From NCBI GenBank assembly GCA_002269645.1, contig NIVC01001115.1, positions 435,079 to 499,078 of the forward strand: a DNA stretch of 64,000 bases. The letters are read 5' to 3'. A model generated the notes under the pieces. That model was given only the letters and a program-made list of their open reading frames with translations, did not search any database and was not told the origin of the DNA. Shown piece by piece: positions 11,093 to 54,516 of this stretch. The DNA comes from Macrostomum lignano. Its lineage: Eukaryota. Numbering within the stretch: position 1 is the stretch's first letter; each line of letters begins with the position of its first letter. A program made the translations under genes and the position numbers.

Positions 11093-11500
11093 CTTGTGAA
11101 GTTTCCAGCTTGTGAAGTTTCCAGCTTGTGAAGTTTCGAGTTTGTGAAGTTTCCAGCTTGTGAAGTTTCGAGTTTGTGAAGTTTCCAGCTTGTGACGTTT
11201 CCAGCTTGTGAAGTTTCCATCTTGTGAAGTTTCCAGCTTGTGAAGTTTCCATCTTGTGAAGTTTCCAGCTTGTGAAGTTTCCATCTTGTGAAGTTTCCAG
11301 CTTGTGAAGTTTCCAGCTTGTGAAGTTTCCAGCTTGTGAAGTTTCCAGCTTGTGAAGTTTCCAGCTTGTGAAGTTTCCAGCTTGTGACGTTTCCAGCTTG
11401 TGAAGTTTCCAGCTTGTGAAGTTTCCATCTTGTGACGTTTCCAGCTTGTGACGTTTCCAGCTTGTGAAGTTTCCATCTTGTGAAGTTTCCAGCTTGTGAA
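11093..11500. repeat. 16 bp minisatellite (TGTGAAGTTTCCAGCT)n
   Basis: Direct reading. Confidence 0.95.
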
Positions 11501-14364: not shown

Positions 14365-17124
14365 CTATGCAAAGCTGCTGCTGGGCAGCTGGTAGCGCTG
14401 AATCTCTCGCAGCAGTTCGTCATCCTCTTCCTCATCATCCTCTCCATCATTGTCTTCGTCGTCGGTGTCGCCGAACTCCGGCACGCCGAACACCGGCTGT
14501 TGAACTTCAAAATCGTCATCTATGTACAGATCGTCGGACGATGACGGATAAACCGCTGGCATGCCGGTTGCGGTCACACTGGTGGCAGCGGAGGGATTCG
14601 ATGGGCTGGTAGGTGGCGGCTTCATTGCACCCGATGCAGCCTGCTGCTTGGTTGGGTAGGGCAGCACAATGCCGTTGGATTTTGCTGGACTGCCGTTGCA
14701 GTATCCAGCAGGTAGTAGCAGCATGCGCTGCTGCTGCTGATGACTTGCTGGCGTTGTTGGGTCCAGTGGCAGCGGCGGTGGCGGCGGTGGCGGCAGCGGC
14801 GACCGAGGCGGCGTCATCTCGGAGCTGGACCGGTCCGAGCCGGTGGAAATCAACGCCGAGCTGTCGTCCGCGGTCGGTGCGCCAGGAGTTCTCTCTCGCT
14901 GCACTATTCGCCGGCGTTGTATCTGCACCGGCGGCGGCTGGCGCTGCTGCTGCTGCTGCTGTGTCGGCGGCCTTTGAGGCTCCGTCGAAACTGCTCGGTC
15001 ACTGCTGATGGTCAGCTCGGATCGGGAACTGTTGGAGTCGGTCCGTCCGCCAGCAGTGTTCGTCTCCTGATCGTTGTTGCTGACCGAAGCAGGCGCCTCG
15101 TCAATGTCGGACAGGATTAGGAAGCGGTCCGTTGTGAGCTCCGAGTCGCTGCACACGGCATGCCGGTTGAGCCTGGCCCGGTGCCTCTCCAGCTTCTCCC
15201 TTGCCCGGAGAAACGTCTCCAGATCGACCGCCACCAGCGACGCTCCGGCAGCAAGCGCGCTACCCACGGTGGCTGTCAGGTTCAGCACCGACTGCTCTCG
15301 ACGGGTGCGCAGCTCTGACGTCGGTCGCGGCTGGCGTTTCGGCTGGTTTCGCTCGACGGTCTCGGCGCCGAGGGTCGAGTTGTCAGCAGTGAAGTCCAGA
15401 GTGTAGTAGTTGGCGCAGCACGGCCTGCAAGCGTCGCCATCTTCCGTTGGCTGATCGGTTGACGATTTTCCAGCTGGTTGAGCATCGCAGGAGCTTCCGG
15501 CTGGGCAGCACATCACTGGCGGGCACTGGGAGTTGGTGCACGAGTCGCCTGTGAGCCTCGTGACGGCCTCCTGTAGAACTGCGTTTAACCTACAGGCCGC
15601 TCCCGTAGCTGCTGGGGTCTTGCTGCCATGTGGCTGGTCCGGATTTCTCTGCTGAAGGTACTGCGGATCGATGGTCTGCGTCAGCATCGACACCAGCGCG
15701 GTTGTCAACTGCTGGTTGACGCGCTCCACTTCCGACAGCCGTTCGCGCAGGTAGGTGCACTCTTCGGTGAGGTTCTGTGAGTAAAGGTTTGAGCATCAAT
15801 TTGGTCATGACATTAGAATGATTGAGAGCAAACTGTCAATCTTAAAAACCTTCTGAATCAGCGTGTTCTGTATCATTTGATTCGCCAGCTCGTCAGTGAA
15901 TCTGCCAGCCTGCAGCAGCTCCTGTCGCAGCATGCAGTTCTCCCTCTCCAAGCTGGTCAGTCTCCTGTCGCAGCCCACCTGCTCCAGCCGGTCCAGGCGC
16001 ACCGTCAGCTGACTGCGGTGCCCGTCGCTTTCCTGGAAATGTGTAAACAAGTTACAGCTTTGACAGTAACCTATAGCAACCAAATGACTCCCATAGCAAC
16101 CAAATGACTCGCATAGCAACCAAGTGACTCCCTTGGCAACCAAATCACTCCCCTAACAACCAAATGACCAAATGACTACCCTAGCAACCAAATGACTCTC
16201 ATAGCAACCAAATGACTCCCATAGCAACCAAATGACTCCTATAGCAACCAAATGACTCGCATAGCAACCAAGTGACTCCCTTGGCAACCAAATCACTACC
16301 CTAACAACCAAATGACTACCCTAGCAACCAAATGACTAGCCTAGCAACCAAATGACTCTCGTAGCAACCAAGTGACTCCTCTAACAACCAAATGACTACC
16401 CTAGCAACCAAATGACTCCCATATCAATTAAATGACTCCCCAAGCAACCAAATGACTCCCTTAGCAACCAAATGAGTTCACAAGCAACCAAATGATTCCC
16501 CCAGCAATTAAATGACTCACCTAGAAACCAAATGACTTCCCTAGCAACCAAATGACTAACTTAGAAACCAAATGGCTGCATTAGAAACTAAATAAATTCA
16601 CTAGCAATCAATAAAGCCACAAAGTAATACCCTAGTGACTCCCTTGTCAACTGCAATCTCCAAATGACTCCCCTTGAAATCACCTGTCTCTCAGTGCAAC
16701 AAATTAGTATTGGCTCTCGTTTGATAAAATATTGAAACAAATTACCTGAAAGCTCTGCTTCATCTGGCTGCACTCCTTCTCGACCAGTTCCAGTCGCTTT
16801 ATTGCTTCATCAAAGCGGCCAATCAGTCTGGAAAATGCAATTTGATTCGTATTTCTCAATCCTTAGACAACTCTAGATGTCGCGAGAGAGAAATTACTCA
16901 AGAGAATTACAAGCTATCAGGTGTCGCATTAAATCAATCCTCTTACTGTTTCTCAGCCTCCTGAGACTGCTTCAGCTGGCCTCGCATTTCAACAGTGGCA
17001 GCTGCAGCCGCCGCTGCCGCCGCTGCCGCCGCGGTCGCAGCAGAAGAGGCGGCCTCTGAGCACTCGCTGGTGCCACCGTTGATGCTGCTGTTGCTGCGGT
17101 TTGAGCTGCAGACGGTTGCTTGCA

Positions 17125-17540: not shown

Positions 17541-23136
<5,596 letters not shown>

Positions 23137-24544
23137 GACAACTGGTAACCTTCAATATCTTCCGAGTGCGTGGTTTGCAGTTTCAAACTGCCTTATGAAT
23201 ATCTGTACCCAGGACCGGACTATTATTGAGGCTCGCCATGTTTGTCAACAAAATATCTTCGTATACGAGCTATTCTCCGCCAAAAATCTACTTGGGATAA
23301 GCAAGAGTACTATTTCTGCAGCTGAATATTTAAGACGCACGACACTACTACGACTACGGCTACGACTACGACTGTACTACTACTACTCTACTACCACTAC
23401 TACTACTACTGCAACTACTAGTGCTACTACTACTGAAAATCTAGCTTCAACTGATCCGCAGTGCCCAGTCGCCTGTGACCAGGGGCTGTGCAGGCGGCGA
23501 TCTGTGACCAGACGCCGCCAACTGCGACTAGTGGCCTGCCTGGCTACTTCAAATAACTGCTTACCAGTACGTCTCTACTACGACTACGCCTACGACTGCT
23601 CTACTACTACTCTACTAATACTTGTACTACTACTACTTCCATTACTACTACTACGAGCTACTACTGCAACTACTAGTGCTACTACTACTGATAATCTAGC
23701 CTCAACTGATCTGCAGTGCCCAGTCGCCTGTGACCAGGGGCTGTGCAGGCGGCGATCTGTGACCAGACGCCGCCAACTGCGACTAGTGGCCTGCCTGGCT
23801 ACTTCAAATAACTGCTTACCAGTACGTCTCTACTACGACTACGCCTACGACTGCTCTACTACTACTCTACTAATACTTGTACTACTACTACTTCCATTAC
23901 TACTACTACGAGCTACTACTGCAACTACTAGTGCTACTACTACTGATAATCTAGCCTCAACTGATCTGCAGTGCCCAGTCGCCTGTGACCAGGGGCTGTG
24001 CAGGCGGCGATCTGTGACCAGACGCCGCCAACTGCGACTAGTGGCCTGCCTGGCTACTTCAAATAACTGCTTACCAGTACGTCTCTACTACGACTACGCC
24101 TACGACTGCTCTACTACTACTCTACTAATACTTGTACTACTACTACTTCCATTACTACTACTACGAGCTACTACTGCAACTACTAGTGCTACTACTACTG
24201 ATAATCTAGCCTCAACTGATCTGCAGTGCCCAGTCGCCTGTGACCAGGGGCTGTGCAGGCGGCGATCTGTGACCAGACGCCGCCAACTGCAACTAGTGGC
24301 CTGCCTGGCGACTCAATTTATTTACTGTTTATGTAATAACATCTATTTACTTGCACTTCTTTTTGAAAAGTTCTCAGTGCTCTGTTTTAATTTAATATTT
24401 GTTCTCAATTCTACGGGCGTAAATAACTTATTTGTTGAACTTTTCAAGATGCTTATTCATACACTTCTACGCTCTAAATCTGTTTTTCTATAGCACCTAA
24501 CATCTTTAATATTTTTTGTGCAAGGCTTTAAGCTGCCAATCTTT

Positions 24545-24706
24545 AACCAATCAGCGTGCTTCAACTCACGTTTTTAACTAATTATGCGTACACATCTTTA
24601 CTCAACACTGCTCAGTGCACCCCCAAAAGTCGCATATATATATATTGAAATTATGTTACAATAACTTCACTGCCAATATATTTGTTTTTAAACCCGAATA
24701 AATAAA
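24545..24706 (+). promoter_or_regulatory. Candidate CCAAT box (AACCAATCAG, 24545-24554), TATA-like (AT)n (24634-24645) and overlapping AATAAA hexamers (24697-24706) upstream of the HHR; repeated in each unit
   Basis: Motifs are seen directly; function is inferred. Confidence 0.4.
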
Positions 24707-24744
24707 CCCTGACGAAGGCCCAGTCTGGGCCGAAATATCGGTTT
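24704..24744 (+). ncRNA. Minimal type I hammerhead ribozyme motif, copy 1; predicted cleavage after C24739
   Basis: AAACC (stem I) CTGACGA (core) A GGCCC-AGTCT-GGGCC (stem II) GAA ATAT (palindromic stem III) C GGTTT (stem I'). Confidence 0.88.
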
Positions 24745-26033
24745 TTTTCGAACATTCGACAACTGGTAACCTTCAATATCTTCCGAGTGCGTGGTTTGCA
24801 GTTTCAAACTGCCTTATGAATATCTGTACCCAGGACCGGACTATTATTGAGGCTCGCCATGTTTGTCAACAAAATATCTTCGTATACGAGCTATTCTCCG
24901 CCAAAAATCTATTTGGGATAAGCAAGAGTACTATTTCTGCAGCTGAATATTTAAGACGCACGACACTACTACGACTACGGCTACGACTACGACTGTACTA
25001 CTACTACTCTACTACCACTACTACTACTACTGCAACTACTAGTGCTACTACTACTGAAAATCTAGCTTCAACTGATCCGCAGTGCCCAGTCGCCTGTGAC
25101 CAGGGGCTGTGCAGGCGGCGATCTGTGACCAGACGCCGCCAACTGCGACTAGTGGCCTGCCTGGCTACTTCAAATAACTGCTTACCAGTACGTCTCTACT
25201 ACGACTACGCCTACGACTGCTCTACTACTACTCTACTAATACTTGTACTACTACTACTTCCATTACTACTACTACGAGCTACTACTGCAACTACTAGTGC
25301 TACTACTACTGATAATCTAGCTTCAACTGATCCGCAGTGCCCAGTCGCCTGTGACCAGGGGCTGTGCAGGCGGCGATCTGTGACCAGACGCCGCCAACTG
25401 CGACTAGTGGCCTGCCTGGCTACTTCAAATAACTGCTTACCAGTACGTCTCTACTACGACTACGCCTACGACTGCTCTACTACTACTCTACTAATACTTG
25501 TACTACTACTACTTCCATTACTACTACTACGAGCTACTACTGCAACTACTAGTGCTACTACTACTGATAATCTAGCCTCAACTGATCTGCAGTGCCCAGT
25601 CGCCTGTGACCAGGGGCTGTGCAGGCGGCGATCTGTGACCAGACGCCGCCAACTGCAACTAGTGGCCTGCCTGGCGACTCAATTTTCTCAGTTCTCAAAG
25701 TTCTCAGTGCTCTGTTTTAATTTAATATTTGTTCTCAATTCTACGGGCGTAAATAACTTATTTGTTGAACTTTTCAAGATGCTTATTCATACACTTCTAC
25801 GCTCTAAATCTGTTTTTCTATAGCACCTAACATCTTTAATATTTTTTGTGCAAGGCTTTAAGCTGCCAATCTTTAACCAATCAGCGTGCTTCAACTCACG
25901 TTTTTAACTAATTATGCGTACACATCTTTACTCAACACTGCTCAGTGCACCCCCAAAAGTCGCATATATATATATTGAAATTATGTTACAATAACTTCAC
26001 TGCCAATATATTTGTTTTTAAACCCGAATAAAT

Positions 26034-29000
26034 AAACCCTGACGAAGGCCCAGTCTGGGCCGAAATATCGGTTTTTTTCGAACATTCGACAACTGGTAAC
26101 CTTCAATATCTTCCGAGTGCGTGGTTTGCAGTTTCAAACTGCCTTATGAATATCTGTACCCAGGACCGGACTATTATTGAGGCTCGCCATGTTTGTCAAC
26201 AAAATATCTTCGTATACGAGCTATTCTCCGCCAAAAATCTACTTGGGATAAGCAAGAGTACTATTTCTGCAGCTGAATATTTAAGACGCACGACACTACT
26301 ACGACTACGGCTACGACTACGACTGTACTACTACTACTCTACTACCACTACTACTACTACTGCAACTACTAGTGCTACTACTACTGAAAATCTAGCTTCA
26401 ACTGATCCGCAGTGCCCAGTCGCCTGTGACCAGGGGCTGTGCAGGCGGCGATCTGTGACCAGACGCCGCCAACTGCGACTAGTGGCCTGCCTGGCTACTT
26501 CAAATAACTGCTTACCAGTACGTCTCTACTACGACTACGCCTACGACTGCTCTACTACTACTCTACTAATACTTGTACTACTACTACTTCCATTACTACT
26601 ACTACGAGCTACTACTGCAACTACTAGTGCTACTACTACTGATAATCTAGCTTCAACTGATCCGCAGTGCCCAGTCGCCTGTGACCAGGGGCTGTGCAGG
26701 CGGCGATCTGTGACCAGACGCCGCCAACTGCGACTAGTGGCCTGCCTGGCTACTTCAAATAACTGCTTACCAGTACGTCTCTACTACGACTACGCCTACG
26801 ACTGCTCTACTACTACTCTACTAATACTTGTACTACTACTACTTCCATTACTACTACTACGAGCTACTACTGCAACTACTAGTGCTACTACTACTGATAA
26901 TCTAGCCTCAACTGATCTGCAGTGCCCAGTCGCCTGTGACCAGGGGCTGTGCAGGCGGCGATCTGTGACCAGACGCCGCCAACTGCAACTAGTGGCCTGC
27001 CTGGCGACTCAATTTTCTCAGTTCTCAAAGTTCTCAGTGCTCTGTTTTAATTTAATATTTGTTCTCAATTCTACGGGCGTAAATAACTTATTTGTTGAAC
27101 TTTTCAAGATGCTTATTCATACACTTCTACGCTCTAAATCTGTTTTTCTATAGCACCTAACATCTTTAATATTTTTTGTGCAAGGCTTTAAGCTGCCAAT
27201 CTTTAACCAATCAGCGTGCTTCAACTCACGTTTTTAACTAATTATGCGTACACATCTTTACTCAACACTGCTCAGTGCACCCCCAAAAGTCGCATATATA
27301 TATATTGAAATTATGTTACAATAACTTCACTGCCAATATATTTGTTTTTAAACCCGAATAAATAAACCCTGACGAAGGCCCAGTCTGGGCCGAAATATCG
27401 GTTTTTTTCGAACATTCGACAACTGGTAACCTTCAATATCTTCCGAGTGCGTGGTTTGCAGTTTCAAACTGCCTTATGAATATCTGTACCCAGGACCGGA
27501 CTATTATTGAGGCTCGCCATGTTTGTCAACAAAATATCTTCGTATACGAGCTATTCTCCGCCAAAAATCTACTTGGGATAAGCAAGAGTACTATTTCTGC
27601 AGCTGAATATTTAAGACGCACGACACTACTACGACTACGGCTACGACTACGACTGTACTACTACTACTCTACTACCACTACTACTACTACTGCAACTACT
27701 AGTGCTACTACTACTGAAAATCTAGCTTCAACTGATCCGCAGTGCCCAGTCGCCTGTGACCAGGGGCTGTGCAGGCGGCGATCTGTGACCAGACGCCGCC
27801 AACTGCGACTAGTGGCCTGCCTGGCTACTTCAAATAACTGCTTACCAGTACGTCTCTACTACGACTACGCCTACGACTGCTCTACTACTACTCTACTAAT
27901 ACTTGTACTACTACTACTTCCATTACTACTACTACGAGCTACTACTGCAACTACTAGTGCTACTACTACTGATAATCTAGCTTCAACTGATCCGCAGTGC
28001 CCAGTCGCCTGTGACCAGGGGCTGTGCAGGCGGCGATCTGTGACCAGACGCCGCCAACTGCGACTAGTGGCCTGCCTGGCTACTTCAAATAACTGCTTAC
28101 CAGTACGTCTCTACTACGACTACGCCTACGACTGCTCTACTACTACTCTACTAATACTTGTACTACTACTACTTCCATTACTACTACTACGAGCTACTAC
28201 TGCAACTACTAGTGCTACTACTACTGATAATCTAGCCTCAACTGATCTGCAGTGCCCAGTCGCCTGTGACCAGGGGCTGTGCAGGCGGCGATCTGTGACC
28301 AGACGCCGCCAACTGCAACTAGTGGCCTGCCTGGCGACTCAATTTTCTCAGTTCTCAAAGTTCTCAGTGCTCTGTTTTAATTTAATATTTGTTCTCAATT
28401 CTACGGGCGTAAATAACTTATTTGTTGAACTTTTCAAGATGCTTATTCATACACTTCTACGCTCTAAATCTGTTTTTCTATAGCACCTAACATCTTTAAT
28501 ATTTTTTGTGCAAGGCTTTAAGCTGCCAATCTTTAACCAATCAGCGTGCTTCAACTCACGTTTTTAACTAATTATGCGTACACATCTTTACTCAACACTG
28601 CTCAGTGCACCCCCAAAAGTCGCATATATATATATTGAAATTATGTTACAATAACTTCACTGCCAATATATTTGTTTTTAAACCCGAATAAATAAACCCT
28701 GACGAAGGCCCAGTCTGGGCCGAAATATCGGTTTTTTTCGAACATTCGACAACTGGTAACCTTCAATATCTTCCGAGTGCGTGGTTTGCAGTTTCAAACT
28801 GCCTTATGAATATCTGTACCCAGGACCGGACTATTATTGAGGCTCGCCATGTTTGTCAACAAAATATCTTCGTATACGAGCTATTCTCCGCCAAAAATCT
28901 ACTTGGGATAAGCAAGAGTACTATTTCTGCAGCTGAATATTTAAGACGCACGACACTACTACGACTACGGCTACGACTACGACTGTACTACTACTACTCT

Positions 29001-32000
29001 ACTACCACTACTACTACTACTGCAACTACTAGTGCTACTACTACTGAAAATCTAGCTTCAACTGATCCGCAGTGCCCAGTCGCCTGTGACCAGGGGCTGT
29101 GCAGGCGGCGATCTGTGACCAGACGCCGCCAACTGCGACTAGTGGCCTGCCTGGCTACTTCAAATAACTGCTTACCAGTACGTCTCTACTACGACTACGC
29201 CTACGACTGCTCTACTACTACTCTACTAATACTTGTACTACTACTACTTCCATTACTACTACTACGAGCTACTACTGCAACTACTAGTGCTACTACTACT
29301 GATAATCTAGCTTCAACTGATCCGCAGTGCCCAGTCGCCTGTGACCAGGGGCTGTGCAGGCGGCGATCTGTGACCAGACGCCGCCAACTGCGACTAGTGG
29401 CCTGCCTGGCTACTTCAAATAACTGCTTACCAGTACGTCTCTACTACGACTACGCCTACGACTGCTCTACTACTACTCTACTAATACTTGTACTACTACT
29501 ACTTCCATTACTACTACTACGAGCTACTACTGCAACTACTAGTGCTACTACTACTGATAATCTAGCCTCAACTGATCTGCAGTGCCCAGTCGCCTGTGAC
29601 CAGGGGCTGTGCAGGCGGCGATCTGTGACCAGACGCCGCCAACTGCAACTAGTGGCCTGCCTGGCGACTCAATTTTCTCAGTTCTCAAAGTTCTCAGTGC
29701 TCTGTTTTAATTTAATATTTGTTCTCAATTCTACGGGCGTAAATAACTTATTTGTTGAACTTTTCAAGATGCTTATTCATACACTTCTACGCTCTAAATC
29801 TGTTTTTCTATAGCACCTAACATCTTTAATATTTTTTGTGCAAGGCTTTAAGCTGCCAATCTTTAACCAATCAGCGTGCTTCAACTCACGTTTTTAACTA
29901 ATTATGCGTACACATCTTTACTCAACACTGCTCAGTGCACCCCCAAAAGTCGCATATATATATATTGAAATTATGTTACAATAACTTCACTGCCAATATA
30001 TTTGTTTTTAAACCCGAATAAATAAACCCTGACGAAGGCCCAGTCTGGGCCGAAATATCGGTTTTTTTCGAACATTCGACAACTGGTAACCTTCAATATC
30101 TTCCGAGTGCGTGGTTTGCAGTTTCAAACTGCCTTATGAATATCTGTACCCAGGACCGGACTATTATTGAGGCTCGCCATGTTTGTCAACAAAATATCTT
30201 CGTATACGAGCTATTCTCCGCCAAAAATCTACTTGGGATAAGCAAGAGTACTATTTCTGCAGCTGAATATTTAAGACGCACGACACTACTACGACTACGG
30301 CTACGACTACGACTGTACTACTACTACTCTACTACCACTACTACTACTACTGCAACTACTAGTGCTACTACTACTGAAAATCTAGCTTCAACTGATCCGC
30401 AGTGCCCAGTCGCCTGTGACCAGGGGCTGTGCAGGCGGCGATCTGTGACCAGACGCCGCCAACTGCGACTAGTGGCCTGCCTGGCTACTTCAAATAACTG
30501 CTTACCAGTACGTCTCTACTACGACTACGCCTACGACTGCTCTACTACTACTCTACTAATACTTGTACTACTACTACTTCCATTACTACTACTACGAGCT
30601 ACTACTGCAACTACTAGTGCTACTACTACTGATAATCTAGCTTCAACTGATCCGCAGTGCCCAGTCGCCTGTGACCAGGGGCTGTGCAGGCGGCGATCTG
30701 TGACCAGACGCCGCCAACTGCGACTAGTGGCCTGCCTGGCTACTTCAAATAACTGCTTACCAGTACGTCTCTACTACGACTACGCCTACGACTGCTCTAC
30801 TACTACTCTACTAATACTTGTACTACTACTACTTCCATTACTACTACTACGAGCTACTACTGCAACTACTAGTGCTACTACTACTGATAATCTAGCCTCA
30901 ACTGATCTGCAGTGCCCAGTCGCCTGTGACCAGGGGCTGTGCAGGCGGCGATCTGTGACCAGACGCCGCCAACTGCAACTAGTGGCCTGCCTGGCGACTC
31001 AATTTTCTCAGTTCTCAAAGTTCTCAGTGCTCTGTTTTAATTTAATATTTGTTCTCAATTCTACGGGCGTAAATAACTTATTTGTTGAACTTTTCAAGAT
31101 GCTTATTCATACACTTCTACGCTCTAAATCTGTTTTTCTATAGCACCTAACATCTTTAATATTTTTTGTGCAAGGCTTTAAGCTGCCAATCTTTAACCAA
31201 TCAGCGTGCTTCAACTCACGTTTTTAACTAATTATGCGTACACATCTTTACTCAACACTGCTCAGTGCACCCCCAAAAGTCGCATATATATATATTGAAA
31301 TTATGTTACAATAACTTCACTGCCAATATATTTGTTTTTAAACCCGAATAAATAAACCCTGACGAAGGCCCAGTCTGGGCCGAAATATCGGTTTTTTTCG
31401 AACATTCGACAACTGGTAACCTTCAATATCTTCCGAGTGCGTGGTTTGCAGTTTCAAACTGCCTTATGAATATCTGTACCCAGGACCGGACTATTATTGA
31501 GGCTCGCCATGTTTGTCAACAAAATATCTTCGTATACGAGCTATTCTCCGCCAAAAATCTACTTGGGATAAGCAAGAGTACTATTTCTGCAGCTGAATAT
31601 TTAAGACGCACGACACTACTACGACTACGGCTACGACTACGACTGTACTACTACTACTCTACTACCACTACTACTACTACTGCAACTACTAGTGCTACTA
31701 CTACTGAAAATCTAGCTTCAACTGATCCGCAGTGCCCAGTCGCCTGTGACCAGGGGCTGTGCAGGCGGCGATCTGTGACCAGACGCCGCCAACTGCGACT
31801 AGTGGCCTGCCTGGCTACTTCAAATAACTGCTTACCAGTACGTCTCTACTACGACTACGCCTACGACTGCTCTACTACTACTCTACTAATACTTGTACTA
31901 CTACTACTTCCATTACTACTACTACGAGCTACTACTGCAACTACTAGTGCTACTACTACTGATAATCTAGCTTCAACTGATCCGCAGTGCCCAGTCGCCT

Positions 32001-35000
32001 GTGACCAGGGGCTGTGCAGGCGGCGATCTGTGACCAGACGCCGCCAACTGCGACTAGTGGCCTGCCTGGCTACTTCAAATAACTGCTTACCAGTACGTCT
32101 CTACTACGACTACGCCTACGACTGCTCTACTACTACTCTACTAATACTTGTACTACTACTACTTCCATTACTACTACTACGAGCTACTACTGCAACTACT
32201 AGTGCTACTACTACTGATAATCTAGCCTCAACTGATCTGCAGTGCCCAGTCGCCTGTGACCAGGGGCTGTGCAGGCGGCGATCTGTGACCAGACGCCGCC
32301 AACTGCAACTAGTGGCCTGCCTGGCGACTCAATTTTCTCAGTTCTCAAAGTTCTCAGTGCTCTGTTTTAATTTAATATTTGTTCTCAATTCTACGGGCGT
32401 AAATAACTTATTTGTTGAACTTTTCAAGATGCTTATTCATACACTTCTACGCTCTAAATCTGTTTTTCTATAGCACCTAACATCTTTAATATTTTTTGTG
32501 CAAGGCTTTAAGCTGCCAATCTTTAACCAATCAGCGTGCTTCAACTCACGTTTTTAACTAATTATGCGTACACATCTTTACTCAACACTGCTCAGTGCAC
32601 CCCCAAAAGTCGCATATATATATATTGAAATTATGTTACAATAACTTCACTGCCAATATATTTGTTTTTAAACCCGAATAAATAAACCCTGACGAAGGCC
32701 CAGTCTGGGCCGAAATATCGGTTTTTTTCGAACATTCGACAACTGGTAACCTTCAATATCTTCCGAGTGCGTGGTTTGCAGTTTCAAACTGCCTTATGAA
32801 TATCTGTACCCAGGACCGGACTATTATTGAGGCTCGCCATGTTTGTCAACAAAATATCTTCGTATACGAGCTATTCTCCGCCAAAAATCTACTTGGGATA
32901 AGCAAGAGTACTATTTCTGCAGCTGAATATTTAAGACGCACGACACTACTACGACTACGGCTACGACTACGACTGTACTACTACTACTCTACTACCACTA
33001 CTACTACTACTGCAACTACTAGTGCTACTACTACTGAAAATCTAGCTTCAACTGATCCGCAGTGCCCAGTCGCCTGTGACCAGGGGCTGTGCAGGCGGCG
33101 ATCTGTGACCAGACGCCGCCAACTGCGACTAGTGGCCTGCCTGGCTACTTCAAATAACTGCTTACCAGTACGTCTCTACTACGACTACGCCTACGACTGC
33201 TCTACTACTACTCTACTAATACTTGTACTACTACTACTTCCATTACTACTACTACGAGCTACTACTGCAACTACTAGTGCTACTACTACTGATAATCTAG
33301 CTTCAACTGATCCGCAGTGCCCAGTCGCCTGTGACCAGGGGCTGTGCAGGCGGCGATCTGTGACCAGACGCCGCCAACTGCGACTAGTGGCCTGCCTGGC
33401 TACTTCAAATAACTGCTTACCAGTACGTCTCTACTACGACTACGCCTACGACTGCTCTACTACTACTCTACTAATACTTGTACTACTACTACTTCCATTA
33501 CTACTACTACGAGCTACTACTGCAACTACTAGTGCTACTACTACTGATAATCTAGCCTCAACTGATCTGCAGTGCCCAGTCGCCTGTGACCAGGGGCTGT
33601 GCAGGCGGCGATCTGTGACCAGACGCCGCCAACTGCAACTAGTGGCCTGCCTGGCGACTCAATTTTCTCAGTTCTCAAAGTTCTCAGTGCTCTGTTTTAA
33701 TTTAATATTTGTTCTCAATTCTACGGGCGTAAATAACTTATTTGTTGAACTTTTCAAGATGCTTATTCATACACTTCTACGCTCTAAATCTGTTTTTCTA
33801 TAGCACCTAACATCTTTAATATTTTTTGTGCAAGGCTTTAAGCTGCCAATCTTTAACCAATCAGCGTGCTTCAACTCACGTTTTTAACTAATTATGCGTA
33901 CACATCTTTACTCAACACTGCTCAGTGCACCCCCAAAAGTCGCATATATATATATTGAAATTATGTTACAATAACTTCACTGCCAATATATTTGTTTTTA
34001 AACCCGAATAAATAAACCCTGACGAAGGCCCAGTCTGGGCCGAAATATCGGTTTTTTTCGAACATTCGACAACTGGTAACCTTCAATATCTTCCGAGTGC
34101 GTGGTTTGCAGTTTCAAACTGCCTTATGAATATCTGTACCCAGGACCGGACTATTATTGAGGCTCGCCATGTTTGTCAACAAAATATCTTCGTATACGAG
34201 CTATTCTCCGCCAAAAATCTACTTGGGATAAGCAAGAGTACTATTTCTGCAGCTGAATATTTAAGACGCACGACACTACTACGACTACGGCTACGACTAC
34301 GACTGTACTACTACTACTCTACTACCACTACTACTACTACTGCAACTACTAGTGCTACTACTACTGAAAATCTAGCTTCAACTGATCCGCAGTGCCCAGT
34401 CGCCTGTGACCAGGGGCTGTGCAGGCGGCGATCTGTGACCAGACGCCGCCAACTGCGACTAGTGGCCTGCCTGGCTACTTCAAATAACTGCTTACCAGTA
34501 CGTCTCTACTACGACTACGCCTACGACTGCTCTACTACTACTCTACTAATACTTGTACTACTACTACTTCCATTACTACTACTACGAGCTACTACTGCAA
34601 CTACTAGTGCTACTACTACTGATAATCTAGCTTCAACTGATCCGCAGTGCCCAGTCGCCTGTGACCAGGGGCTGTGCAGGCGGCGATCTGTGACCAGACG
34701 CCGCCAACTGCGACTAGTGGCCTGCCTGGCTACTTCAAATAACTGCTTACCAGTACGTCTCTACTACGACTACGCCTACGACTGCTCTACTACTACTCTA
34801 CTAATACTTGTACTACTACTACTTCCATTACTACTACTACGAGCTACTACTGCAACTACTAGTGCTACTACTACTGATAATCTAGCCTCAACTGATCTGC
34901 AGTGCCCAGTCGCCTGTGACCAGGGGCTGTGCAGGCGGCGATCTGTGACCAGACGCCGCCAACTGCAACTAGTGGCCTGCCTGGCGACTCAATTTTCTCA

Positions 35001-38000
35001 GTTCTCAAAGTTCTCAGTGCTCTGTTTTAATTTAATATTTGTTCTCAATTCTACGGGCGTAAATAACTTATTTGTTGAACTTTTCAAGATGCTTATTCAT
35101 ACACTTCTACGCTCTAAATCTGTTTTTCTATAGCACCTAACATCTTTAATATTTTTTGTGCAAGGCTTTAAGCTGCCAATCTTTAACCAATCAGCGTGCT
35201 TCAACTCACGTTTTTAACTAATTATGCGTACACATCTTTACTCAACACTGCTCAGTGCACCCCCAAAAGTCGCATATATATATATTGAAATTATGTTACA
35301 ATAACTTCACTGCCAATATATTTGTTTTTAAACCCGAATAAATAAACCCTGACGAAGGCCCAGTCTGGGCCGAAATATCGGTTTTTTTCGAACATTCGAC
35401 AACTGGTAACCTTCAATATCTTCCGAGTGCGTGGTTTGCAGTTTCAAACTGCCTTATGAATATCTGTACCCAGGACCGGACTATTATTGAGGCTCGCCAT
35501 GTTTGTCAACAAAATATCTTCGTATACGAGCTATTCTCCGCCAAAAATCTACTTGGGATAAGCAAGAGTACTATTTCTGCAGCTGAATATTTAAGACGCA
35601 CGACACTACTACGACTACGGCTACGACTACGACTGTACTACTACTACTCTACTACCACTACTACTACTACTGCAACTACTAGTGCTACTACTACTGAAAA
35701 TCTAGCTTCAACTGATCCGCAGTGCCCAGTCGCCTGTGACCAGGGGCTGTGCAGGCGGCGATCTGTGACCAGACGCCGCCAACTGCGACTAGTGGCCTGC
35801 CTGGCTACTTCAAATAACTGCTTACCAGTACGTCTCTACTACGACTACGCCTACGACTGCTCTACTACTACTCTACTAATACTTGTACTACTACTACTTC
35901 CATTACTACTACTACGAGCTACTACTGCAACTACTAGTGCTACTACTACTGATAATCTAGCTTCAACTGATCCGCAGTGCCCAGTCGCCTGTGACCAGGG
36001 GCTGTGCAGGCGGCGATCTGTGACCAGACGCCGCCAACTGCGACTAGTGGCCTGCCTGGCTACTTCAAATAACTGCTTACCAGTACGTCTCTACTACGAC
36101 TACGCCTACGACTGCTCTACTACTACTCTACTAATACTTGTACTACTACTACTTCCATTACTACTACTACGAGCTACTACTGCAACTACTAGTGCTACTA
36201 CTACTGATAATCTAGCCTCAACTGATCTGCAGTGCCCAGTCGCCTGTGACCAGGGGCTGTGCAGGCGGCGATCTGTGACCAGACGCCGCCAACTGCAACT
36301 AGTGGCCTGCCTGGCGACTCAATTTTCTCAGTTCTCAAAGTTCTCAGTGCTCTGTTTTAATTTAATATTTGTTCTCAATTCTACGGGCGTAAATAACTTA
36401 TTTGTTGAACTTTTCAAGATGCTTATTCATACACTTCTACGCTCTAAATCTGTTTTTCTATAGCACCTAACATCTTTAATATTTTTTGTGCAAGGCTTTA
36501 AGCTGCCAATCTTTAACCAATCAGCGTGCTTCAACTCACGTTTTTAACTAATTATGCGTACACATCTTTACTCAACACTGCTCAGTGCACCCCCAAAAGT
36601 CGCATATATATATATTGAAATTATGTTACAATAACTTCACTGCCAATATATTTGTTTTTAAACCCGAATAAATAAACCCTGACGAAGGCCCAGTCTGGGC
36701 CGAAATATCGGTTTTTTTCGAACATTCGACAACTGGTAACCTTCAATATCTTCCGAGTGCGTGGTTTGCAGTTTCAAACTGCCTTATGAATATCTGTACC
36801 CAGGACCGGACTATTATTGAGGCTCGCCATGTTTGTCAACAAAATATCTTCGTATACGAGCTATTCTCCGCCAAAAATCTACTTGGGATAAGCAAGAGTA
36901 CTATTTCTGCAGCTGAATATTTAAGACGCACGACACTACTACGACTACGGCTACGACTACGACTGTACTACTACTACTCTACTACCACTACTACTACTAC
37001 TGCAACTACTAGTGCTACTACTACTGAAAATCTAGCTTCAACTGATCCGCAGTGCCCAGTCGCCTGTGACCAGGGGCTGTGCAGGCGGCGATCTGTGACC
37101 AGACGCCGCCAACTGCGACTAGTGGCCTGCCTGGCTACTTCAAATAACTGCTTACCAGTACGTCTCTACTACGACTACGCCTACGACTGCTCTACTACTA
37201 CTCTACTAATACTTGTACTACTACTACTTCCATTACTACTACTACGAGCTACTACTGCAACTACTAGTGCTACTACTACTGATAATCTAGCTTCAACTGA
37301 TCCGCAGTGCCCAGTCGCCTGTGACCAGGGGCTGTGCAGGCGGCGATCTGTGACCAGACGCCGCCAACTGCGACTAGTGGCCTGCCTGGCTACTTCAAAT
37401 AACTGCTTACCAGTACGTCTCTACTACGACTACGCCTACGACTGCTCTACTACTACTCTACTAATACTTGTACTACTACTACTTCCATTACTACTACTAC
37501 GAGCTACTACTGCAACTACTAGTGCTACTACTACTGATAATCTAGCCTCAACTGATCTGCAGTGCCCAGTCGCCTGTGACCAGGGGCTGTGCAGGCGGCG
37601 ATCTGTGACCAGACGCCGCCAACTGCAACTAGTGGCCTGCCTGGCGACTCAATTTTCTCAGTTCTCAAAGTTCTCAGTGCTCTGTTTTAATTTAATATTT
37701 GTTCTCAATTCTACGGGCGTAAATAACTTATTTGTTGAACTTTTCAAGATGCTTATTCATACACTTCTACGCTCTAAATCTGTTTTTCTATAGCACCTAA
37801 CATCTTTAATATTTTTTGTGCAAGGCTTTAAGCTGCCAATCTTTAACCAATCAGCGTGCTTCAACTCACGTTTTTAACTAATTATGCGTACACATCTTTA
37901 CTCAACACTGCTCAGTGCACCCCCAAAAGTCGCATATATATATATTGAAATTATGTTACAATAACTTCACTGCCAATATATTTGTTTTTAAACCCGAATA

Positions 38001-40993
38001 AATAAACCCTGACGAAGGCCCAGTCTGGGCCGAAATATCGGTTTTTTTCGAACATTCGACAACTGGTAACCTTCAATATCTTCCGAGTGCGTGGTTTGCA
38101 GTTTCAAACTGCCTTATGAATATCTGTACCCAGGACCGGACTATTATTGAGGCTCGCCATGTTTGTCAACAAAATATCTTCGTATACGAGCTATTCTCCG
38201 CCAAAAATCTACTTGGGATAAGCAAGAGTACTATTTCTGCAGCTGAATATTTAAGACGCACGACACTACTACGACTACGGCTACGACTACGACTGTACTA
38301 CTACTACTCTACTACCACTACTACTACTACTGCAACTACTAGTGCTACTACTACTGAAAATCTAGCTTCAACTGATCCGCAGTGCCCAGTCGCCTGTGAC
38401 CAGGGGCTGTGCAGGCGGCGATCTGTGACCAGACGCCGCCAACTGCGACTAGTGGCCTGCCTGGCTACTTCAAATAACTGCTTACCAGTACGTCTCTACT
38501 ACGACTACGCCTACGACTGCTCTACTACTACTCTACTAATACTTGTACTACTACTACTTCCATTACTACTACTACGAGCTACTACTGCAACTACTAGTGC
38601 TACTACTACTGATAATCTAGCTTCAACTGATCCGCAGTGCCCAGTCGCCTGTGACCAGGGGCTGTGCAGGCGGCGATCTGTGACCAGACGCCGCCAACTG
38701 CGACTAGTGGCCTGCCTGGCTACTTCAAATAACTGCTTACCAGTACGTCTCTACTACGACTACGCCTACGACTGCTCTACTACTACTCTACTAATACTTG
38801 TACTACTACTACTTCCATTACTACTACTACGAGCTACTACTGCAACTACTAGTGCTACTACTACTGATAATCTAGCCTCAACTGATCTGCAGTGCCCAGT
38901 CGCCTGTGACCAGGGGCTGTGCAGGCGGCGATCTGTGACCAGACGCCGCCAACTGCAACTAGTGGCCTGCCTGGCGACTCAATTTTCTCAGTTCTCAAAG
39001 TTCTCAGTGCTCTGTTTTAATTTAATATTTGTTCTCAATTCTACGGGCGTAAATAACTTATTTGTTGAACTTTTCAAGATGCTTATTCATACACTTCTAC
39101 GCTCTAAATCTGTTTTTCTATAGCACCTAACATCTTTAATATTTTTGTGCAAGGCTTTAAGCTGCCAATCTTTAACCAATCAGCGTGCTTCAACTCACGT
39201 TTTTAACTAATTATGCGTACACATCTTTACTCAACACTGCTCAGTGCACCCCCAAAAGTCGCATATATATATATTGAAATTATGTTACAATAACTTCACT
39301 GCCAATATATTTGTTTTTAAACCCGAATAAATAAACCCTGACGAAGGCCCAGTCTGGGCCGAAATATCGGTTTTTTTCGAACATTCGACAACTGGTAACC
39401 TTCAATATCTTCCGAGTGCGTGGTTTGCAGTTTCAAACTGCCTTATGAATATCTGTACCCAGGACCGGACTATTATTGAGGCTCGCCATGTTTGTCAACA
39501 AAATATCTTCGTATACGAGCTATTCTCCGCCAAAAATCTACTTGGGATAAGCAAGAGTACTATTTCTGCAGCTGAATATTTAAGACGCACGACACTACTA
39601 CGACTACGGCTACGACTACGACTGTACTACTACTACTCTACTACCACTACTACTACTACTGCAACTACTAGTGCTACTACTACTGAAAATCTAGCTTCAA
39701 CTGATCCGCAGTGCCCAGTCGCCTGTGACCAGGGGCTGTGCAGGCGGCGATCTGTGACCAGACGCCGCCAACTGCGACTAGTGGCCTGCCTGGCTACTTC
39801 AAATAACTGCTTACCAGTACGTCTCTACTACGACTACGCCTACGACTGCTCTACTACTACTCTACTAATACTTGTACTACTACTACTTCCATTACTACTA
39901 CTACGAGCTACTACTGCAACTACTAGTGCTACTACTACTGATAATCTAGCCTCAACTGATCTGCAGTGCCCAGTCGCCTGTGACCAGGGGCTGTGCAGGC
40001 GGCGATCTGTGACCAGACGCCGCCAACTGCGACTAGTGGCCTGCCTGGCTACTTCAAATAACTGCTTACCAGTACGTCTCTACTACGACTACGCCTACGA
40101 CTGCTCTACTACTACTCTACTAATACTTGTACTACTACTACTTCCATTACTACTACTACGAGCTACTACTGCAACTACTAGTGCTACTACTACTGATAAT
40201 CTAGCCTCAACTGATCTGCAGTGCCCAGTCGCCTGTGACCAGGGGCTGTGCAGGCGGCGATCTGTGACCAGACGCCGCCAACTGCGACTAGTGGCCTGCC
40301 TGGCTACTTCAAATAACTGCTTACCAGTACGTCTCTACTACGACTACGCCTACGACTGCTCTACTACTACTCTACTAATACTTGTACTACTACTACTTCC
40401 ATTACTACTACTACGAGCTACTACTGCAACTACTAGTGCTACTACTACTGATAATCTAGCCTCAACTGATCTGCAGTGCCCAGTCGCCTGTGACCAGGGG
40501 CTGTGCAGGCGGCGATCTGTGACCAGACGCCGCCAACTGCAACTAGTGGCCTGCCTGGCGACTCAATTTATTTACTGTTTATGTAATAACATCTATTTAC
40601 TTGCACTTCTTTTTGAAAAGTTCTCAGTGCTCTGTTTTAATTTAATATTTGTTCTCAATTCTACGGGCGTAAATAACTTATTTGTTGAACTTTTCAAGAT
40701 GCTTATTCATACACTTCTACGCTCTAAATCTGTTTTTCTATAGCACCTAACATCTTTAATATTTTTTGTGCAAGGCTTTAAGCTGCCAATCTTTAACCAA
40801 TCAGCGTGCTTCAACTCACGTTTTTAACTAATTATACGTACACATCTTTACTCAACACTGCTCAGTGCACCCCAAAAGTAGCATATATATATATTGAAAT
40901 TATGTTACAATAACTTCACTGCCAATATATTTGTTTTTAAACCCGAATAAATAAACCCTGACGAAGGCCCAGTCTGGGCCGAAATATCGGTTT
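26034..40993 (+). ncRNA. Hammerhead copies 2-13 (41 nt each), starting at 26034, 27364, 28694, 30024, 31354, 32684, 34014, 35344, 36674, 38004, 39333, 40953
   Basis: The same motif is present in every unit. Confidence 0.88.
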
Positions 40994-41069
40994 TTTTCGA
41001 ACATTCGACAACTGGTAACCTTCAATATCTTCCGAGTGCGTGGTTTGCAGTTTCAAACTGCCTTATGAA

Positions 41070-41460
<391 letters not shown>

Positions 41461-41764
41461 TATCTGTCTTTCATTTTGTCCTTCATTCCTGTCCCTGTCT
41501 CCCACACAGAGTCTGCTTCAATCAGCAAACGGCATTGTCAATCACTAGGCAATTCCCTCCCCCCAATACTCGGTATTGTATTATGAGAGTTGGCGCCCAG
41601 ATTTACAGCTTTTTCCGCCCCGAAATTCTGCCTCCCAATTACGGCAGCTCCATGCGGGGCCACCTGGACTGTGGGAGAACGGAGAGGCTTTTAGTCTCTG
41701 AGGAATTTTAGGGGGTAGCAGTTGCGAGAGCCTCTACTGCGCTGCACTGCCGTCTCACAAAAGT

Positions 41765-42214
<450 letters not shown>

Positions 42215-54409: not shown

Positions 54410-54429
54410 GTCTGTCTGTCTGTCTGTCA

Positions 54430-54467
<38 letters not shown>

Positions 54468-54468
54468 G

Positions 54469-54516
<48 letters not shown>
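54410..54516. repeat. (TCTG)n microsatellite
   Basis: Direct reading. Confidence 0.95.

What the first reader, a model, noticed from the sequence alone, without database searches (positions are those of the whole stretch)
24704..24744. Minimal type I hammerhead with a palindromic 4-nt stem III (AUAU): spaced tandem copies could supply dimer partners
Seen: AAACC/GGTTT stem I (extendable AATAAACC/GGTTTTTT), CUGACGA core, an extra A, GGCCC/GGGCC stem II, GAA, AUAU, then C17. Stem III cannot form within one motif (no loop), but AUAU is self-complementary. Established: PLE-type minimal hammerheads with palindromic stem III self-cleave as dimers. Inference: a multi-unit transcript would let neighbouring motifs about 1.3 kb apart pair and cleave, coupling processing to multimer transcription.
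Basis: partly seen in the sequence, partly recalled or inferred. Interest (0 to 1): 0.82.

Follow-up and report, generated by a model that had tools for sequence, protein, structure and literature searches.

The report
Minimal hammerhead ribozyme in flatworm retroelement
The motif is a real, textbook "minimal" hammerhead ribozyme of the kind carried by Penelope-like retrotransposons, repeated 13 times in a 1.3-1.6 kb tandem, non-coding retroelement inserted in a (TATC)n microsatellite of the flatworm Macrostomum lignano; this is a new example of a known kind, not a new kind.

Summary
At 24704-24744 (+) lies AAACC-CUGACGA-A-GGCCCA(GUC)UGGGCC-GAA-AUAU-C-GGUUU. All hammerhead core nucleotides are present, helix I has 5 bp and helix II 6 bp, and no helix III hairpin is possible. 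There are 13 identical copies. A min-HHR descriptor found no hit in shuffles, and 400 Mb of random sequence gave no hit carrying all the PLE-type features. Rfam models do not score the motif, because they need helix III.

Every diagnostic feature of the published Penelope-like-element (PLE) min-HHR is present: an unpaired nucleotide between A9 and G10.1, the G10.1-C11.1 pair, a long helix II, a short helix I, and palindromic 15.2-16.2.

The host is Macrostomum lignano. The carrier is a 1330/1620-bp tandem unit with no RT or endonuclease. It is inserted in (TATC)n at three separate loci. The 3' end is constant, 81-86 nt past the predicted cut site. The 5' ends vary, and the array has a 63-68-nt terminal "tail". 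This is a PLE-style, target-primed insertion signature.

Cleavage as a dimer is the published model. It is plausible but untested here. The all-A/U 4-bp helix III is predicted to be weak, and the inserted copies were made from RNA that was not cut at the last hammerhead. Classification: new member of a known kind. Interest is modest.

The parts
24704..24744 (+). Focal min-HHR (copy 1 of 13): helix I, core C3-A9, extra A, 6-bp helix II, G12-A14, AUAU, C17 (24739, predicted cut 3' of it), helix I
26034..26074 (+). min-HHR copy 2. Identical copies 3-12 start at 27364, 28694, 30024, 31354, 32684, 34014, 35344, 36674, 38004 and 39333 (41 nt each)
40953..40993 (+). min-HHR copy 13, the last one; it is followed by the 3' tail of the element
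23137..41074 (+). Whole tandem retroelement array: a 5'-truncated long unit (A type, 1620 bp, 3.7 x 255-bp sub-repeats), 11 short units (B type, 1330 bp, 2.7 sub-repeats), one A unit, and the tail. The 3' end is ambiguous over 41069-41074 because of TATCT microhomology with the target
23137..23204 (+). 5' terminal copy of the 63-68-nt segment found at both ends of the array (GACAACTGG...ATGAATATCT). The array starts 19 nt downstream of where a hammerhead cut would fall
   Evidence: one search compared
41007..41074 (+). 3' terminal copy of the same segment ('tail'). The element ends 81-86 nt after the predicted cut site of the last hammerhead. L002 shows the same end at 3520 and 12996
17541..23136 (.). 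(TATC)n microsatellite, left flank / insertion target (5.6 kb)
41070..41469 (.). (TATC)n microsatellite, right flank / insertion target
26324..27009 (+). 255-bp ACT-rich sub-repeats inside a unit (2.7 copies in B units, 3.7 in A units)
26146..27153 (+). 335-aa ORF in each B unit (432 aa in A units, e.g. 23195-24493). It is low-complexity with no Pfam domain. GenBank annotates it as an M. lignano hypothetical protein. It is probably not a real protein: the ACT tract reads as Tyr/Thr in sub-repeat 1 and as Leu in sub-repeats 2-3
24634..24645 (+). (AT)6 tract 59 nt upstream of each hammerhead. It is complementary to AUAU and could compete in cis for the helix III strand (inference only)

Best explanation
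The motif is a minimal type I hammerhead ribozyme (min-HHR) of the class carried by Penelope-like retrotransposons (PLEs). It sits near the 3' end of each unit of a non-autonomous, 1.33-1.62 kb, tandemly arrayed retroelement family of the flatworm Macrostomum lignano. The family inserts into (TATC)n microsatellites by target-primed reverse transcription, presumably using the RT-endonuclease of an autonomous PLE elsewhere in the genome.

The following is shown:
- the motif and its 13 copies;
- its match to the published min-HHR architecture;
- the host species;
- the absence of RT or endonuclease in the unit;
- insertion in (TATC)n at three unrelated loci;
- a constant 3' end 81-86 nt past the cut site;
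- variable 5' truncation;
- a 63-68-nt terminal redundancy.

The following is inferred. On a multi-unit + strand transcript, two hammerhead copies pair through AUAU (4 bp, shared helix III) and swap their helix I strands. [quoted passage not shown] Cleavage is probably inefficient or factor-assisted, and it is not needed to define the ends of new insertions. Those ends are set by internal initiation of reverse transcription downstream of the hammerhead.
For: Core and helices.

Thirteen identical copies and far above chance.

The features Cervera & de la Pena list as emerging from PLE min-HHRs independently of their descriptor are all present. These are a nucleotide between 9 and 10.1, G10.1-C11.1, palindromic 15.2-16.2, helix II of 6-8 bp and helix I of 4-5 bp. 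They first described the class in another flatworm, S. mansoni, with tandem copies about 3 kb apart (PMC4209133).

Species: the unit ORF is 99% identical to M. lignano BOX15_Mlig029405g1.

The same family occurs in two other contigs of GCA_002269645.1. The flanks of the three loci are unrelated.

All insertions lie in (TATC)n, with the identical 3' junction ...GCCTTATGAATATC|(TATC)n and different 5' junctions.

Tandem arrangement, 5' truncation, a terminal 'tail' and microsatellite bias are described PLE hallmarks (PMC8557442).

In the Anolis PLE PAc, reverse transcription starts internally 111-118 nt into the ORF and the HHR cut is 26 nt into it. That is about 85-92 nt past the cut, close to the 81-86 nt seen here (PMC11167929).

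GenBank gene models over the units derive from RNA-seq-guided assembly, which hints at + strand transcription.
Against: No hammerhead model of Rfam scores the motif.

There is no covariation. Of the 22 copies read, 20 are identical. The two variants are a helix I mismatch and a 1-nt deletion in helix II, neither compensated.

No PLE RT/GIY-YIG gene was found in the 111 kb I hold, so the link to PLE enzymes is by resemblance only.

Microsatellite-specific insertion with 5' truncation also occurs in LINE-type elements (my knowledge).

Helix III is only four A-U pairs. The nearest-neighbour model puts the double hammerhead 4.4 kcal/mol above two monomers and far above a competing extended duplex.

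Published min-HHRs cleave poorly in vitro. For PAc, HHR mutants still insert, and no RNA-seq reads end at the cut site (PMC11167929).

The tail here (63-68 nt) is longer than the usual 30-40 nt.
Confidence: 0.75

Rival explanations
1. The motif is a genuine PLE-lineage hammerhead sequence that no longer cleaves, or never needed to. It persists as a recognition or folding module for the RT-endonuclease near the reverse-transcription start, or simply hitch-hikes. RNA processing plays no part in the element's life cycle.
For: Each insertion contains an intact hammerhead 81-86 nt from its 3' end, and the arrays span up to 13 uncut sites. The all-A/U 4-bp helix III is not favoured by the energy model. 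The (AT)6 tract 59 nt upstream could sequester AUAU. In PAc, catalytic mutants insert normally and no transcripts end at the cut site (PMC11167929). Naiad and Chlamys PLEs thrive without HHRs, and HHRs 'may simply parasitize PLEs' (PMC8557442).
Against: All 11 conserved core nucleotides and both helices are intact in 20 of 22 copies. The family is so young that this says little. Dimeric cleavage of this class has been reported (Lunse, Weinberg & Breaker 2017, cited in PMC6765202; not read here).
Confidence: 0.3
2. It is a non-LTR retrozyme in the sense of Cervera & de la Pena 2020. The tandem repeat is transcribed and self-cleaved, circularised by a host ligase into an abundant circRNA, and copied by rolling-circle reverse transcription, which creates the arrays.
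For: It is a tandem repeat with a type I HHR in every unit, has no coding capacity for RT, and lies on the + strand throughout. Non-LTR retrozymes are argued to be non-autonomous PLE derivatives (bioRxiv 10.64898/2026.07.22.740005).
Against: The unit is 1330-1620 nt, against 170-400 nt. The hammerhead is the minimal form, not the canonical form with loop-loop contacts. The unit RNA is only 48% paired as a circle, with a modest z-score of -2.5, so it is not a compact rod. Units within one array differ in sub-repeat number (A, B x 11, A in the window; other sub-repeat numbers in L002). One circle copied round and round would not give that.
Confidence: 0.15
3. It is a chance hammerhead-like string inside an ordinary macrosatellite that grew by unequal crossing-over.
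For: All copies are identical, so the 13 occurrences count as one event. There is no covariation and no Rfam hit. The block of 11 identical B units between two A units probably does reflect amplification after insertion.
Against: The descriptor is expected about once per 400 Mb of random sequence, and there were no hits with the four independent PLE-type features. There were 0 hits in 300 shuffles. The carrier shows a retroelement insertion signature at three unlinked loci.
Confidence: 0.03
4. The array is a host gene cluster encoding a repetitive Thr/Leu/Cys-rich protein (335-432 aa per unit), with the hammerheads processing a polycistronic precursor.
For: There is one ATG-initiated ORF per unit, on the same strand as the hammerhead. 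GenBank annotates it as a hypothetical protein from RNA-seq-guided models.
Against: The ORF has no Pfam domain and no homologue outside this repeat family. The same ACT tract reads as Tyr/Thr in one sub-repeat and Leu in the next, which shows indifference to frame. ACT, CTA and TAC are never stop codons, so a + strand frame stays open easily. The locus has transposon-type ends in a microsatellite.
Confidence: 0.05

Closest known systems
PLE min-HHR (minimal type I hammerheads in pLTRs of Penelope-like elements; Cervera & de la Pena 2014; Lunse, Weinberg & Breaker 2017)
   Same: The core is identical. Only A15.1-N-N-U16.1 lies between A14 and H17, with a palindromic centre. There is an unpaired nucleotide between A9 and G10.1, a G10.1-C11.1 pair, a 6-bp helix II and a 5-bp helix I, followed by an ill-defined loop 1 and a closing stem. 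Copies are in direct tandem, kilobases apart. The host is a flatworm, as is S. mansoni.
   Different: Here the carrier has no RT-EN ORF. Helix III in the dimer would be four A-U pairs only. The family is almost invariant, whereas most metazoan families are highly variable (D. virilis is the published exception).
Autonomous Penelope-like elements (Penelope/Poseidon, Neptune, Cercyon etc.)
   Same: Head-to-tail tandem organisation, 5' truncation, a short terminal extension ('tail'), the HHR near the 3' end, and a bias for microsatellite or AT-rich targets. The 3' end lies about 80-90 nt past the HHR cut site, like the internal RT start of Anolis PAc.
   Different: There is no reverse transcriptase or GIY-YIG endonuclease. 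The unit is 1.3-1.6 kb rather than about 3-4 kb. The tail is 63-68 nt rather than 30-40 nt. The target is (TATC)n, which the papers I read do not list ((TA)n, (CA)n and (C)n are).
Metazoan non-LTR retrozymes (Cervera & de la Pena 2020), including newt satellite 2 and Schistosoma Sm-alpha
   Same: Non-autonomous tandem repeats with one type I hammerhead per unit. Some act as dimers because helix III is short. They are proposed to be PLE-mobilised.
   Different: Those units are 170-400 nt and carry canonical hammerheads with loop 1-loop 2 contacts. They fold into compact circRNAs. This unit is 4-8 times longer, carries a minimal hammerhead and is not strongly self-paired.
Microsatellite-specific non-LTR retrotransposons (R1-clade elements such as Waldo, Mino, Kibi, Koshi; from my knowledge)
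   Same: Insertion into a specific microsatellite, a fixed 3' end with microhomology to the target, and variable 5' truncation.
   Different: Those are LINEs with an AP endonuclease. They do not carry hammerheads and do not insert as multi-unit tandems with a terminal redundancy.

Membership tests
Hammerhead ribozyme (type I) | Conserved core: C3 U4 G5 A6 N7 G8 A9, G12 A13 A14, A15.1/U16.1, H17 not G | tested here: met
   CUGACGA ... GAA-A..U-C read directly and matched by the descriptor scan
Hammerhead ribozyme (type I) | Three helices around the core; helices I and II present and open at helix I | tested here: met
   Helix I AAACC/GGUUU and helix II GGCCCA/UGGGCC are the minimum-free-energy fold of the 41-mer and of the 57-, 61- and 121-nt contexts
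Hammerhead ribozyme (type I) | Helix III formed within one motif | tested here: not met
   Only AUAU lies between A14 and C17, so no hairpin is possible. Helix III can exist only between two copies
Hammerhead ribozyme (type I) | Scores above threshold with the Rfam hammerhead covariance models | tested here: not met
   No hit at gathering threshold on the window and none at E<=10 on 24600-24850. I take the reason to be that the models include helix III
Hammerhead ribozyme (type I) | Helices supported by compensatory changes among relatives | tested here: inconclusive
   Of 22 copies in three loci, 20 are identical and 2 carry uncompensated changes. The family is too young to test this
Hammerhead ribozyme (type I) | Site-specific self-cleavage 3' of H17 | not testable with these tools
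   Needs in vitro transcription or RNA end mapping
PLE-type min-HHR (Cervera & de la Pena 2014) | No loop 3; 15.1-15.2-16.2-16.1 contiguous, with palindromic 15.2-16.2 | tested here: met
   A-UA-U; criterion from PMC4209133
PLE-type min-HHR (Cervera & de la Pena 2014) | Unpaired nucleotide between A9 and G10.1 | tested here: met
   A24716
PLE-type min-HHR (Cervera & de la Pena 2014) | G10.1-C11.1 pair; long helix II (6-8 bp); short helix I (4-5 bp) | tested here: met
   G24717-C24731; 6 bp and 5 bp
PLE-type min-HHR (Cervera & de la Pena 2014) | A second copy in tandem or nearby (<50 kb) to allow a dimer | tested here: met
   13 direct copies 1330-1620 nt apart
PLE-type min-HHR (Cervera & de la Pena 2014) | Located in the flanking repeat (pLTR) of an element encoding RT + GIY-YIG | tested here: not met
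   No such ORF in the unit, the window, L001 or L002. The rest of the genome was not searchable
Penelope-like element (as mobilising system) | Tandem or partial-tandem insertion with a terminal tail, 5' truncation, and the HHR near the 3' end | tested here: met
   63-68-nt redundancy at both ends; three different 5' ends; the same 3' end 81-86 nt past the HHR cut. Criteria from PMC8557442 and PMC11167929
Penelope-like element (as mobilising system) | An autonomous PLE in the same genome sharing the 3' module | not testable with these tools
   No tool here searches eukaryotic genomes by DNA. The literature search for M. lignano PLEs was uninformative
Non-LTR retrozyme (Cervera & de la Pena 2020) | Tandem repeat with a type I HHR in each unit and no protein for mobility | tested here: met
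Non-LTR retrozyme (Cervera & de la Pena 2020) | Unit of about 170-400 nt with a canonical HHR (loop 1-loop 2 contacts) | tested here: not met
   The unit is 1330/1620 nt and the HHR is minimal. Criterion from PMC7229834
Non-LTR retrozyme (Cervera & de la Pena 2020) | Highly self-paired unit RNA expressed as circRNA | tested here: inconclusive
   The circular minimum-free-energy fold is 48% paired; z = -2.5 against 40 shuffles. Expression as a circle is not testable here

The most novel reading that the evidence does not exclude
The family is a so far undescribed intermediate between autonomous PLEs and the short retrozymes. It would be a kilobase-sized, non-coding PLE parasite that keeps only the roughly 120-nt 3' module: the min-HHR plus the tail that holds the internal reverse-transcription start. 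It targets (TATC)n/(GATA)n specifically. On this reading the constant distance from the hammerhead to the insertion end (81-86 nt here, about 85-92 nt in Anolis PAc) marks a conserved RNA module read by PLE reverse transcriptases. The element would then be a natural minimal template defining what a PLE enzyme needs in cis.
Probability: 0.35. Interest if true: 0.5.

Novelty: new member of a known kind. Interest (0 to 1): 0.3.

Why it matters
The motif itself adds another flatworm genome to the very large set of PLE-associated minimal hammerheads, so nothing about ribozyme biology changes. The carrier has modest value. It is a young, nearly invariant, apparently transcribed family in a transgenic-tractable model animal. 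Its ends are clean: a fixed 3' end at a set distance from the hammerhead, variable 5' ends, and a single microsatellite target. That combination could be used to ask whether min-HHR cleavage happens in vivo at all, and what RNA module a PLE reverse transcriptase recognises. Both questions are left open by the 2014-2024 literature.

Tried and rejected
- **Rfam.** cmscan at gathering threshold and at E<=10 gave no hammerhead hit. The three weak hits (rli52, mir-34, wcaG) are noise.
- **Exact-protein look-up of the unit ORF.** Not on record.
- **Homology search with the unit ORF.** It returned only two M. lignano hypothetical proteins from the same repeat. There were no Logan transcript contigs, so RNA ends could not be examined.
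- **Covariation.** The copies are too similar, so I built no alignment fold or covariance model.
- **Search for a PLE RT/GIY-YIG gene.** Nothing in the window, L001 or L002. The only RT trace is a LINE-like remnant.
- **A structured RNA element in the tail, such as PAc's stem-loop.** The fold is no better than shuffles.
- **A compact viroid- or retrozyme-like fold of the unit.** Not found.
- **Lunse et al. 2017 (PMC5785218).** Not held. The supplements of Cervera 2014 are not held either, so I could not check whether AUAU occurs among the published families.
- **Literature on M. lignano hammerheads or PLEs.** Nothing relevant.
- **The upstream (AT)6 tract as a cis partner for helix III.** Rejected on topology. 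It could pair with AUAU but cannot close the three-way junction.

Full report
**Observation.** The + strand at 24704-24744 reads AAACC CUGACGA A GGCCCA GUC UGGGCC GAA AUAU C GGUUU. In hammerhead numbering:
- AAACC is the 5' strand of helix I.
- CUGACGA is C3-A9.
- One unpaired A follows.
- GGCCCA/UGGGCC is a 6-bp helix II starting with G10.1-C11.1.
- GAA is G12-A14.
- AUAU is A15.1-U15.2-A16.2-U16.1.
- C24739 is C17.
- GGUUU is the 3' strand of helix I.

Helix II has 6 bp, not 5. The suggested 8-bp extension of helix I contains a U.U mismatch. The folding programs instead extend helix I by a small internal loop and a CGAA/UUCG closing stem. The 41-mer is present 13 times, all identical and all on the + strand. 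Eleven spacings are 1330 nt (one reads 1329) and the last is 1620 nt.

**Chance.** I wrote a descriptor for a minimal type I hammerhead:
- helix I of at least 4 bp;
- CUGANGA;
- 0-1 extra nucleotide;
- helix II of 4-9 bp with a 3-8-nt loop;
- GAA, then A-N-N-U-H.

It finds only these 13 sites in the window, on either strand. It found none in 300 dinucleotide-preserving shuffles of the window with the array collapsed to one unit. It found one hit in 400 Mb of random sequence of the same composition. No random hit also had the extra nucleotide, G10.1-C11.1, a palindromic 15.2-16.2, a helix II of at least 6 bp and a helix I of at least 5 bp. The motif is not a chance string, even at the scale of a 764-Mb genome.

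**Folding.** The minimum-free-energy structure of the 41-mer and of wider contexts is helix I plus helix II with the two core strands unpaired (z = -2.27 for the 61-nt context). No helix III can form within one copy.

For two copies, the double hammerhead has helix I strands exchanged and a shared 4-bp AUAU helix III. It evaluates to -24.2 kcal/mol. Two separate monomers give -28.6, and an extended duplex in which the two helix II hairpins open and pair with each other gives -41.1. The nearest-neighbour model ignores the tertiary structure of the core, so this does not exclude the dimer. It does show that a four-A-U helix III adds nothing by itself.

**Database test.** No Rfam family reaches its gathering score anywhere in the window. 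At E<=10 on 24600-24850 there is no hammerhead hit. I attribute this to the Rfam hammerhead models including helix III. It means that membership rests on the descriptor match and on the literature criteria, not on a curated model.

**Comparison with the published class.** Cervera & de la Pena 2014 (PMC4209133) defined the min-HHR as a hammerhead with only the conserved nucleotides and no helix III or loop 3. They found about 2,000 in Schistosoma mansoni, lying in the flanking repeats of Cercyon PLEs with tandem copies about 3 kb apart. [quoted passage not shown] They list as features not imposed by their search:
- the nucleotide between 9 and 10.1;
- the G10.1-C11.1 pair;
- the palindromic 15.2-16.2.

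All of these hold here. The same paper reports no cleavage of a single motif, and low cleavage of dimeric and trimeric constructs. The review PMC6765202 summarises the dimer model and cites Lunse, Weinberg & Breaker 2017, which I could not read.

**Host.** A gamma-glutamyltranspeptidase exon at 7780-8688 (-) is 80% identical to a Macrostomum lignano protein. The ORF of the repeat unit is 99% identical to M. lignano BOX15_Mlig029405g1. The window comes from M. lignano or a very close relative.

**What carries the motif.** The hammerheads punctuate an array from 23137 to about 41074. The array consists of:
- one 5'-truncated long unit (A type: 1620 bp, 3.7 copies of a 255-bp ACT-rich sub-repeat);
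- eleven short units (B type: 1330 bp, 2.7 sub-repeats and a 35-bp difference);
- one further A unit;
- a terminal piece.

The array is embedded in (TATC)n, with 5.6 kb of it on the left and 0.4 kb on the right. It begins at GACAACTGG, 19 nt after the position where a hammerhead cut would fall. It ends at ...GCCTTATGAATATC(T), 81-86 nt after the cut site of the last hammerhead. The uncertainty comes from a 5-nt TATCT microhomology with the target. The two ends therefore share a 63-68-nt segment.

**Other loci.** Through the two annotated proteins I fetched two more loci of assembly GCA_002269645.1. Both carry the same family at over 99% identity. Their flanks are unrelated to the window's. In both, the element lies in (TATC)n.
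- L002 has the identical 3' junction at 3520 and 12996. Its 5' junction lies inside a sub-repeat (CCAGACGCC).
- L001 has another 5' junction (CTGTGACCAGACG, preceded by a few filler bases).
- Two L002 copies share the same flank variants and are probably a local duplication, so I count three independent insertions.

A fixed 3' end, variable 5' truncation and a single kind of target are the signature of target-primed reverse transcription.

**Coding capacity.** No ORF in the unit, the window or the two loci encodes a reverse transcriptase or a GIY-YIG endonuclease. The one RT trace is a decayed LINE-type fragment at 1749-2192 (-). The 335- or 432-aa ORF in each unit has no domain and no relatives outside the repeat. 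It reads the same ACT tract as Tyr/Thr in the first sub-repeat and as Leu in the others. I take it to be an accidental open frame, while noting that GenBank annotates it. The GenBank models of this assembly derive from an RNA-seq-guided transcriptome (PMC5730564). That is indirect evidence that the units are transcribed on the hammerhead strand.

**Link to PLEs.** Craig et al. [quoted passage not shown]

Frangieh et al. 2024 (PMC11167929) showed three things for the Anolis element PAc. Reverse transcription starts internally, 111-118 nt into the ORF. The hammerhead cut lies 26 nt into the ORF. The tail is the stretch between two start sites. The start is thus about 85-92 nt beyond the cut. The constant 3' end here is 81-86 nt beyond it. 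I regard this as a suggestive parallel, not a proof.

The same paper found that hammerhead mutants still insert in vitro and that no RNA-seq reads end at the cut site. Li et al. 2026 (bioRxiv 10.64898/2026.07.22.740005) argue that tandem type I hammerhead repeats of animals are non-autonomous PLE derivatives.

**How it most likely works.** Arrays are transcribed on the + strand. Two hammerhead copies on one transcript (or on two transcripts) can pair through AUAU and swap helix I strands, forming two composite active sites that cut after each C17. This is the published model. It is plausible here and probably inefficient.

Insertion uses an RT-endonuclease supplied in trans, most likely by a PLE. 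The enzyme nicks (TATC)n and starts cDNA synthesis internally about 85 nt downstream of a hammerhead, where UAUCU can pair with the (GATA)n primer strand. It copies one or many units before stopping. The template was uncut, or re-ligated, at the hammerheads it contains. Cleavage therefore does not define the insertion ends.

The heterogeneity of units within arrays argues against simple rolling-circle copying of a single circle. The run of 11 identical B units points to later unequal exchange. The unit RNA is not a compact rod (48% paired, z = -2.5), unlike retrozyme circRNAs (PMC7229834).

**Verdict.** The dimer mechanism remains inference. The motif is a new member of a known kind. The somewhat unusual points belong to the carrier:
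- a kilobase-sized unit;
- a minimal rather than canonical hammerhead;
- (TATC)n specificity;
- a 63-68-nt tail.

They make it an intermediate between autonomous PLEs and short retrozymes rather than something categorically new. Interest 0.3.

Noticed in passing
window 1749-2192 (-), with neighbouring fragments in 1-3100: Decayed reverse-transcriptase fragment with LINE-type motifs (ALFIDFRKAFDSV, GYADDLTLL) in an AT-rich stretch (GC 0.29). The Pfam RVT_1 hit is below threshold (E 0.0017). It is not a PLE and is unrelated to the hammerhead array.
   Followed up: partly
window 17541-23136 and 41070-41469; also 41763-42214 and 54410-54517: Very long (TATC)n (5.6 kb, about 1400 units) beside the array, and (GTCT)n tracts further right. 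The (TATC)n tracts are the recurrent insertion target of the element at all three loci examined.
   Followed up: yes
window 4077-5154, 11092-11501, 13373-14100, 16074-16574, 42926-45162, 46117-46564, 49774-51268, 52142-52540, 56641-57389: An unusual density of unrelated minisatellite arrays, with periods of 16, 17, 18, 20, 21, 44 and 45 bp and up to 140 copies, plus CT-rich low-complexity tracts. This fits the known repeat richness of M. lignano.
   Followed up: no
window 7780-8688 (-): Intron-free 302-aa stretch of a gamma-glutamyltranspeptidase (Pfam PF01019, E 1.8e-75), 80% identical to an M. lignano protein. It is probably a paralogue or a diverged duplicate copy.
   Followed up: partly
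window 62472-63053 (+): Fragment of a sodium:sulfate / citrate transporter family protein (PF00939, E 2.8e-11).
   Followed up: no
window 14365-15729 (-): 454-aa ORF in a GC-rich stretch (0.59) with no Pfam match; not examined further.
   Followed up: no
L002 7514-8740: A 1.2-kb element with terminal inverted repeats (CAGTGTTGGGCAAGTTAC ... GTAACGGAAGTGCCCAACACTG), rich in GTAACTT motifs. It is inserted inside a 255-bp sub-repeat of the hammerhead array and looks like a MITE-type DNA transposon.
   Followed up: no
window 24634-24645 and the same place in every unit: An (AT)6 tract 59 nt upstream of each hammerhead. It is complementary to the AUAU helix III strand and could compete with dimer formation.
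   Followed up: partly
L001 19530-19569 and L002 3399-3439: The only two hammerhead variants among 22 copies: a 1-nt deletion in the 5' strand of helix II (in a C run, possibly a long-read error), and G1.2 to U, which breaks helix I. Neither is compensated.
   Followed up: yes
L001 15595-15605: At the 5' junction of the L001 array, a few extra bases (TATTTAAAC) lie between (TATC)n and the truncated unit. They resemble the TTTAAACC just upstream of the hammerhead, so a template switch during insertion is possible.
   Followed up: no
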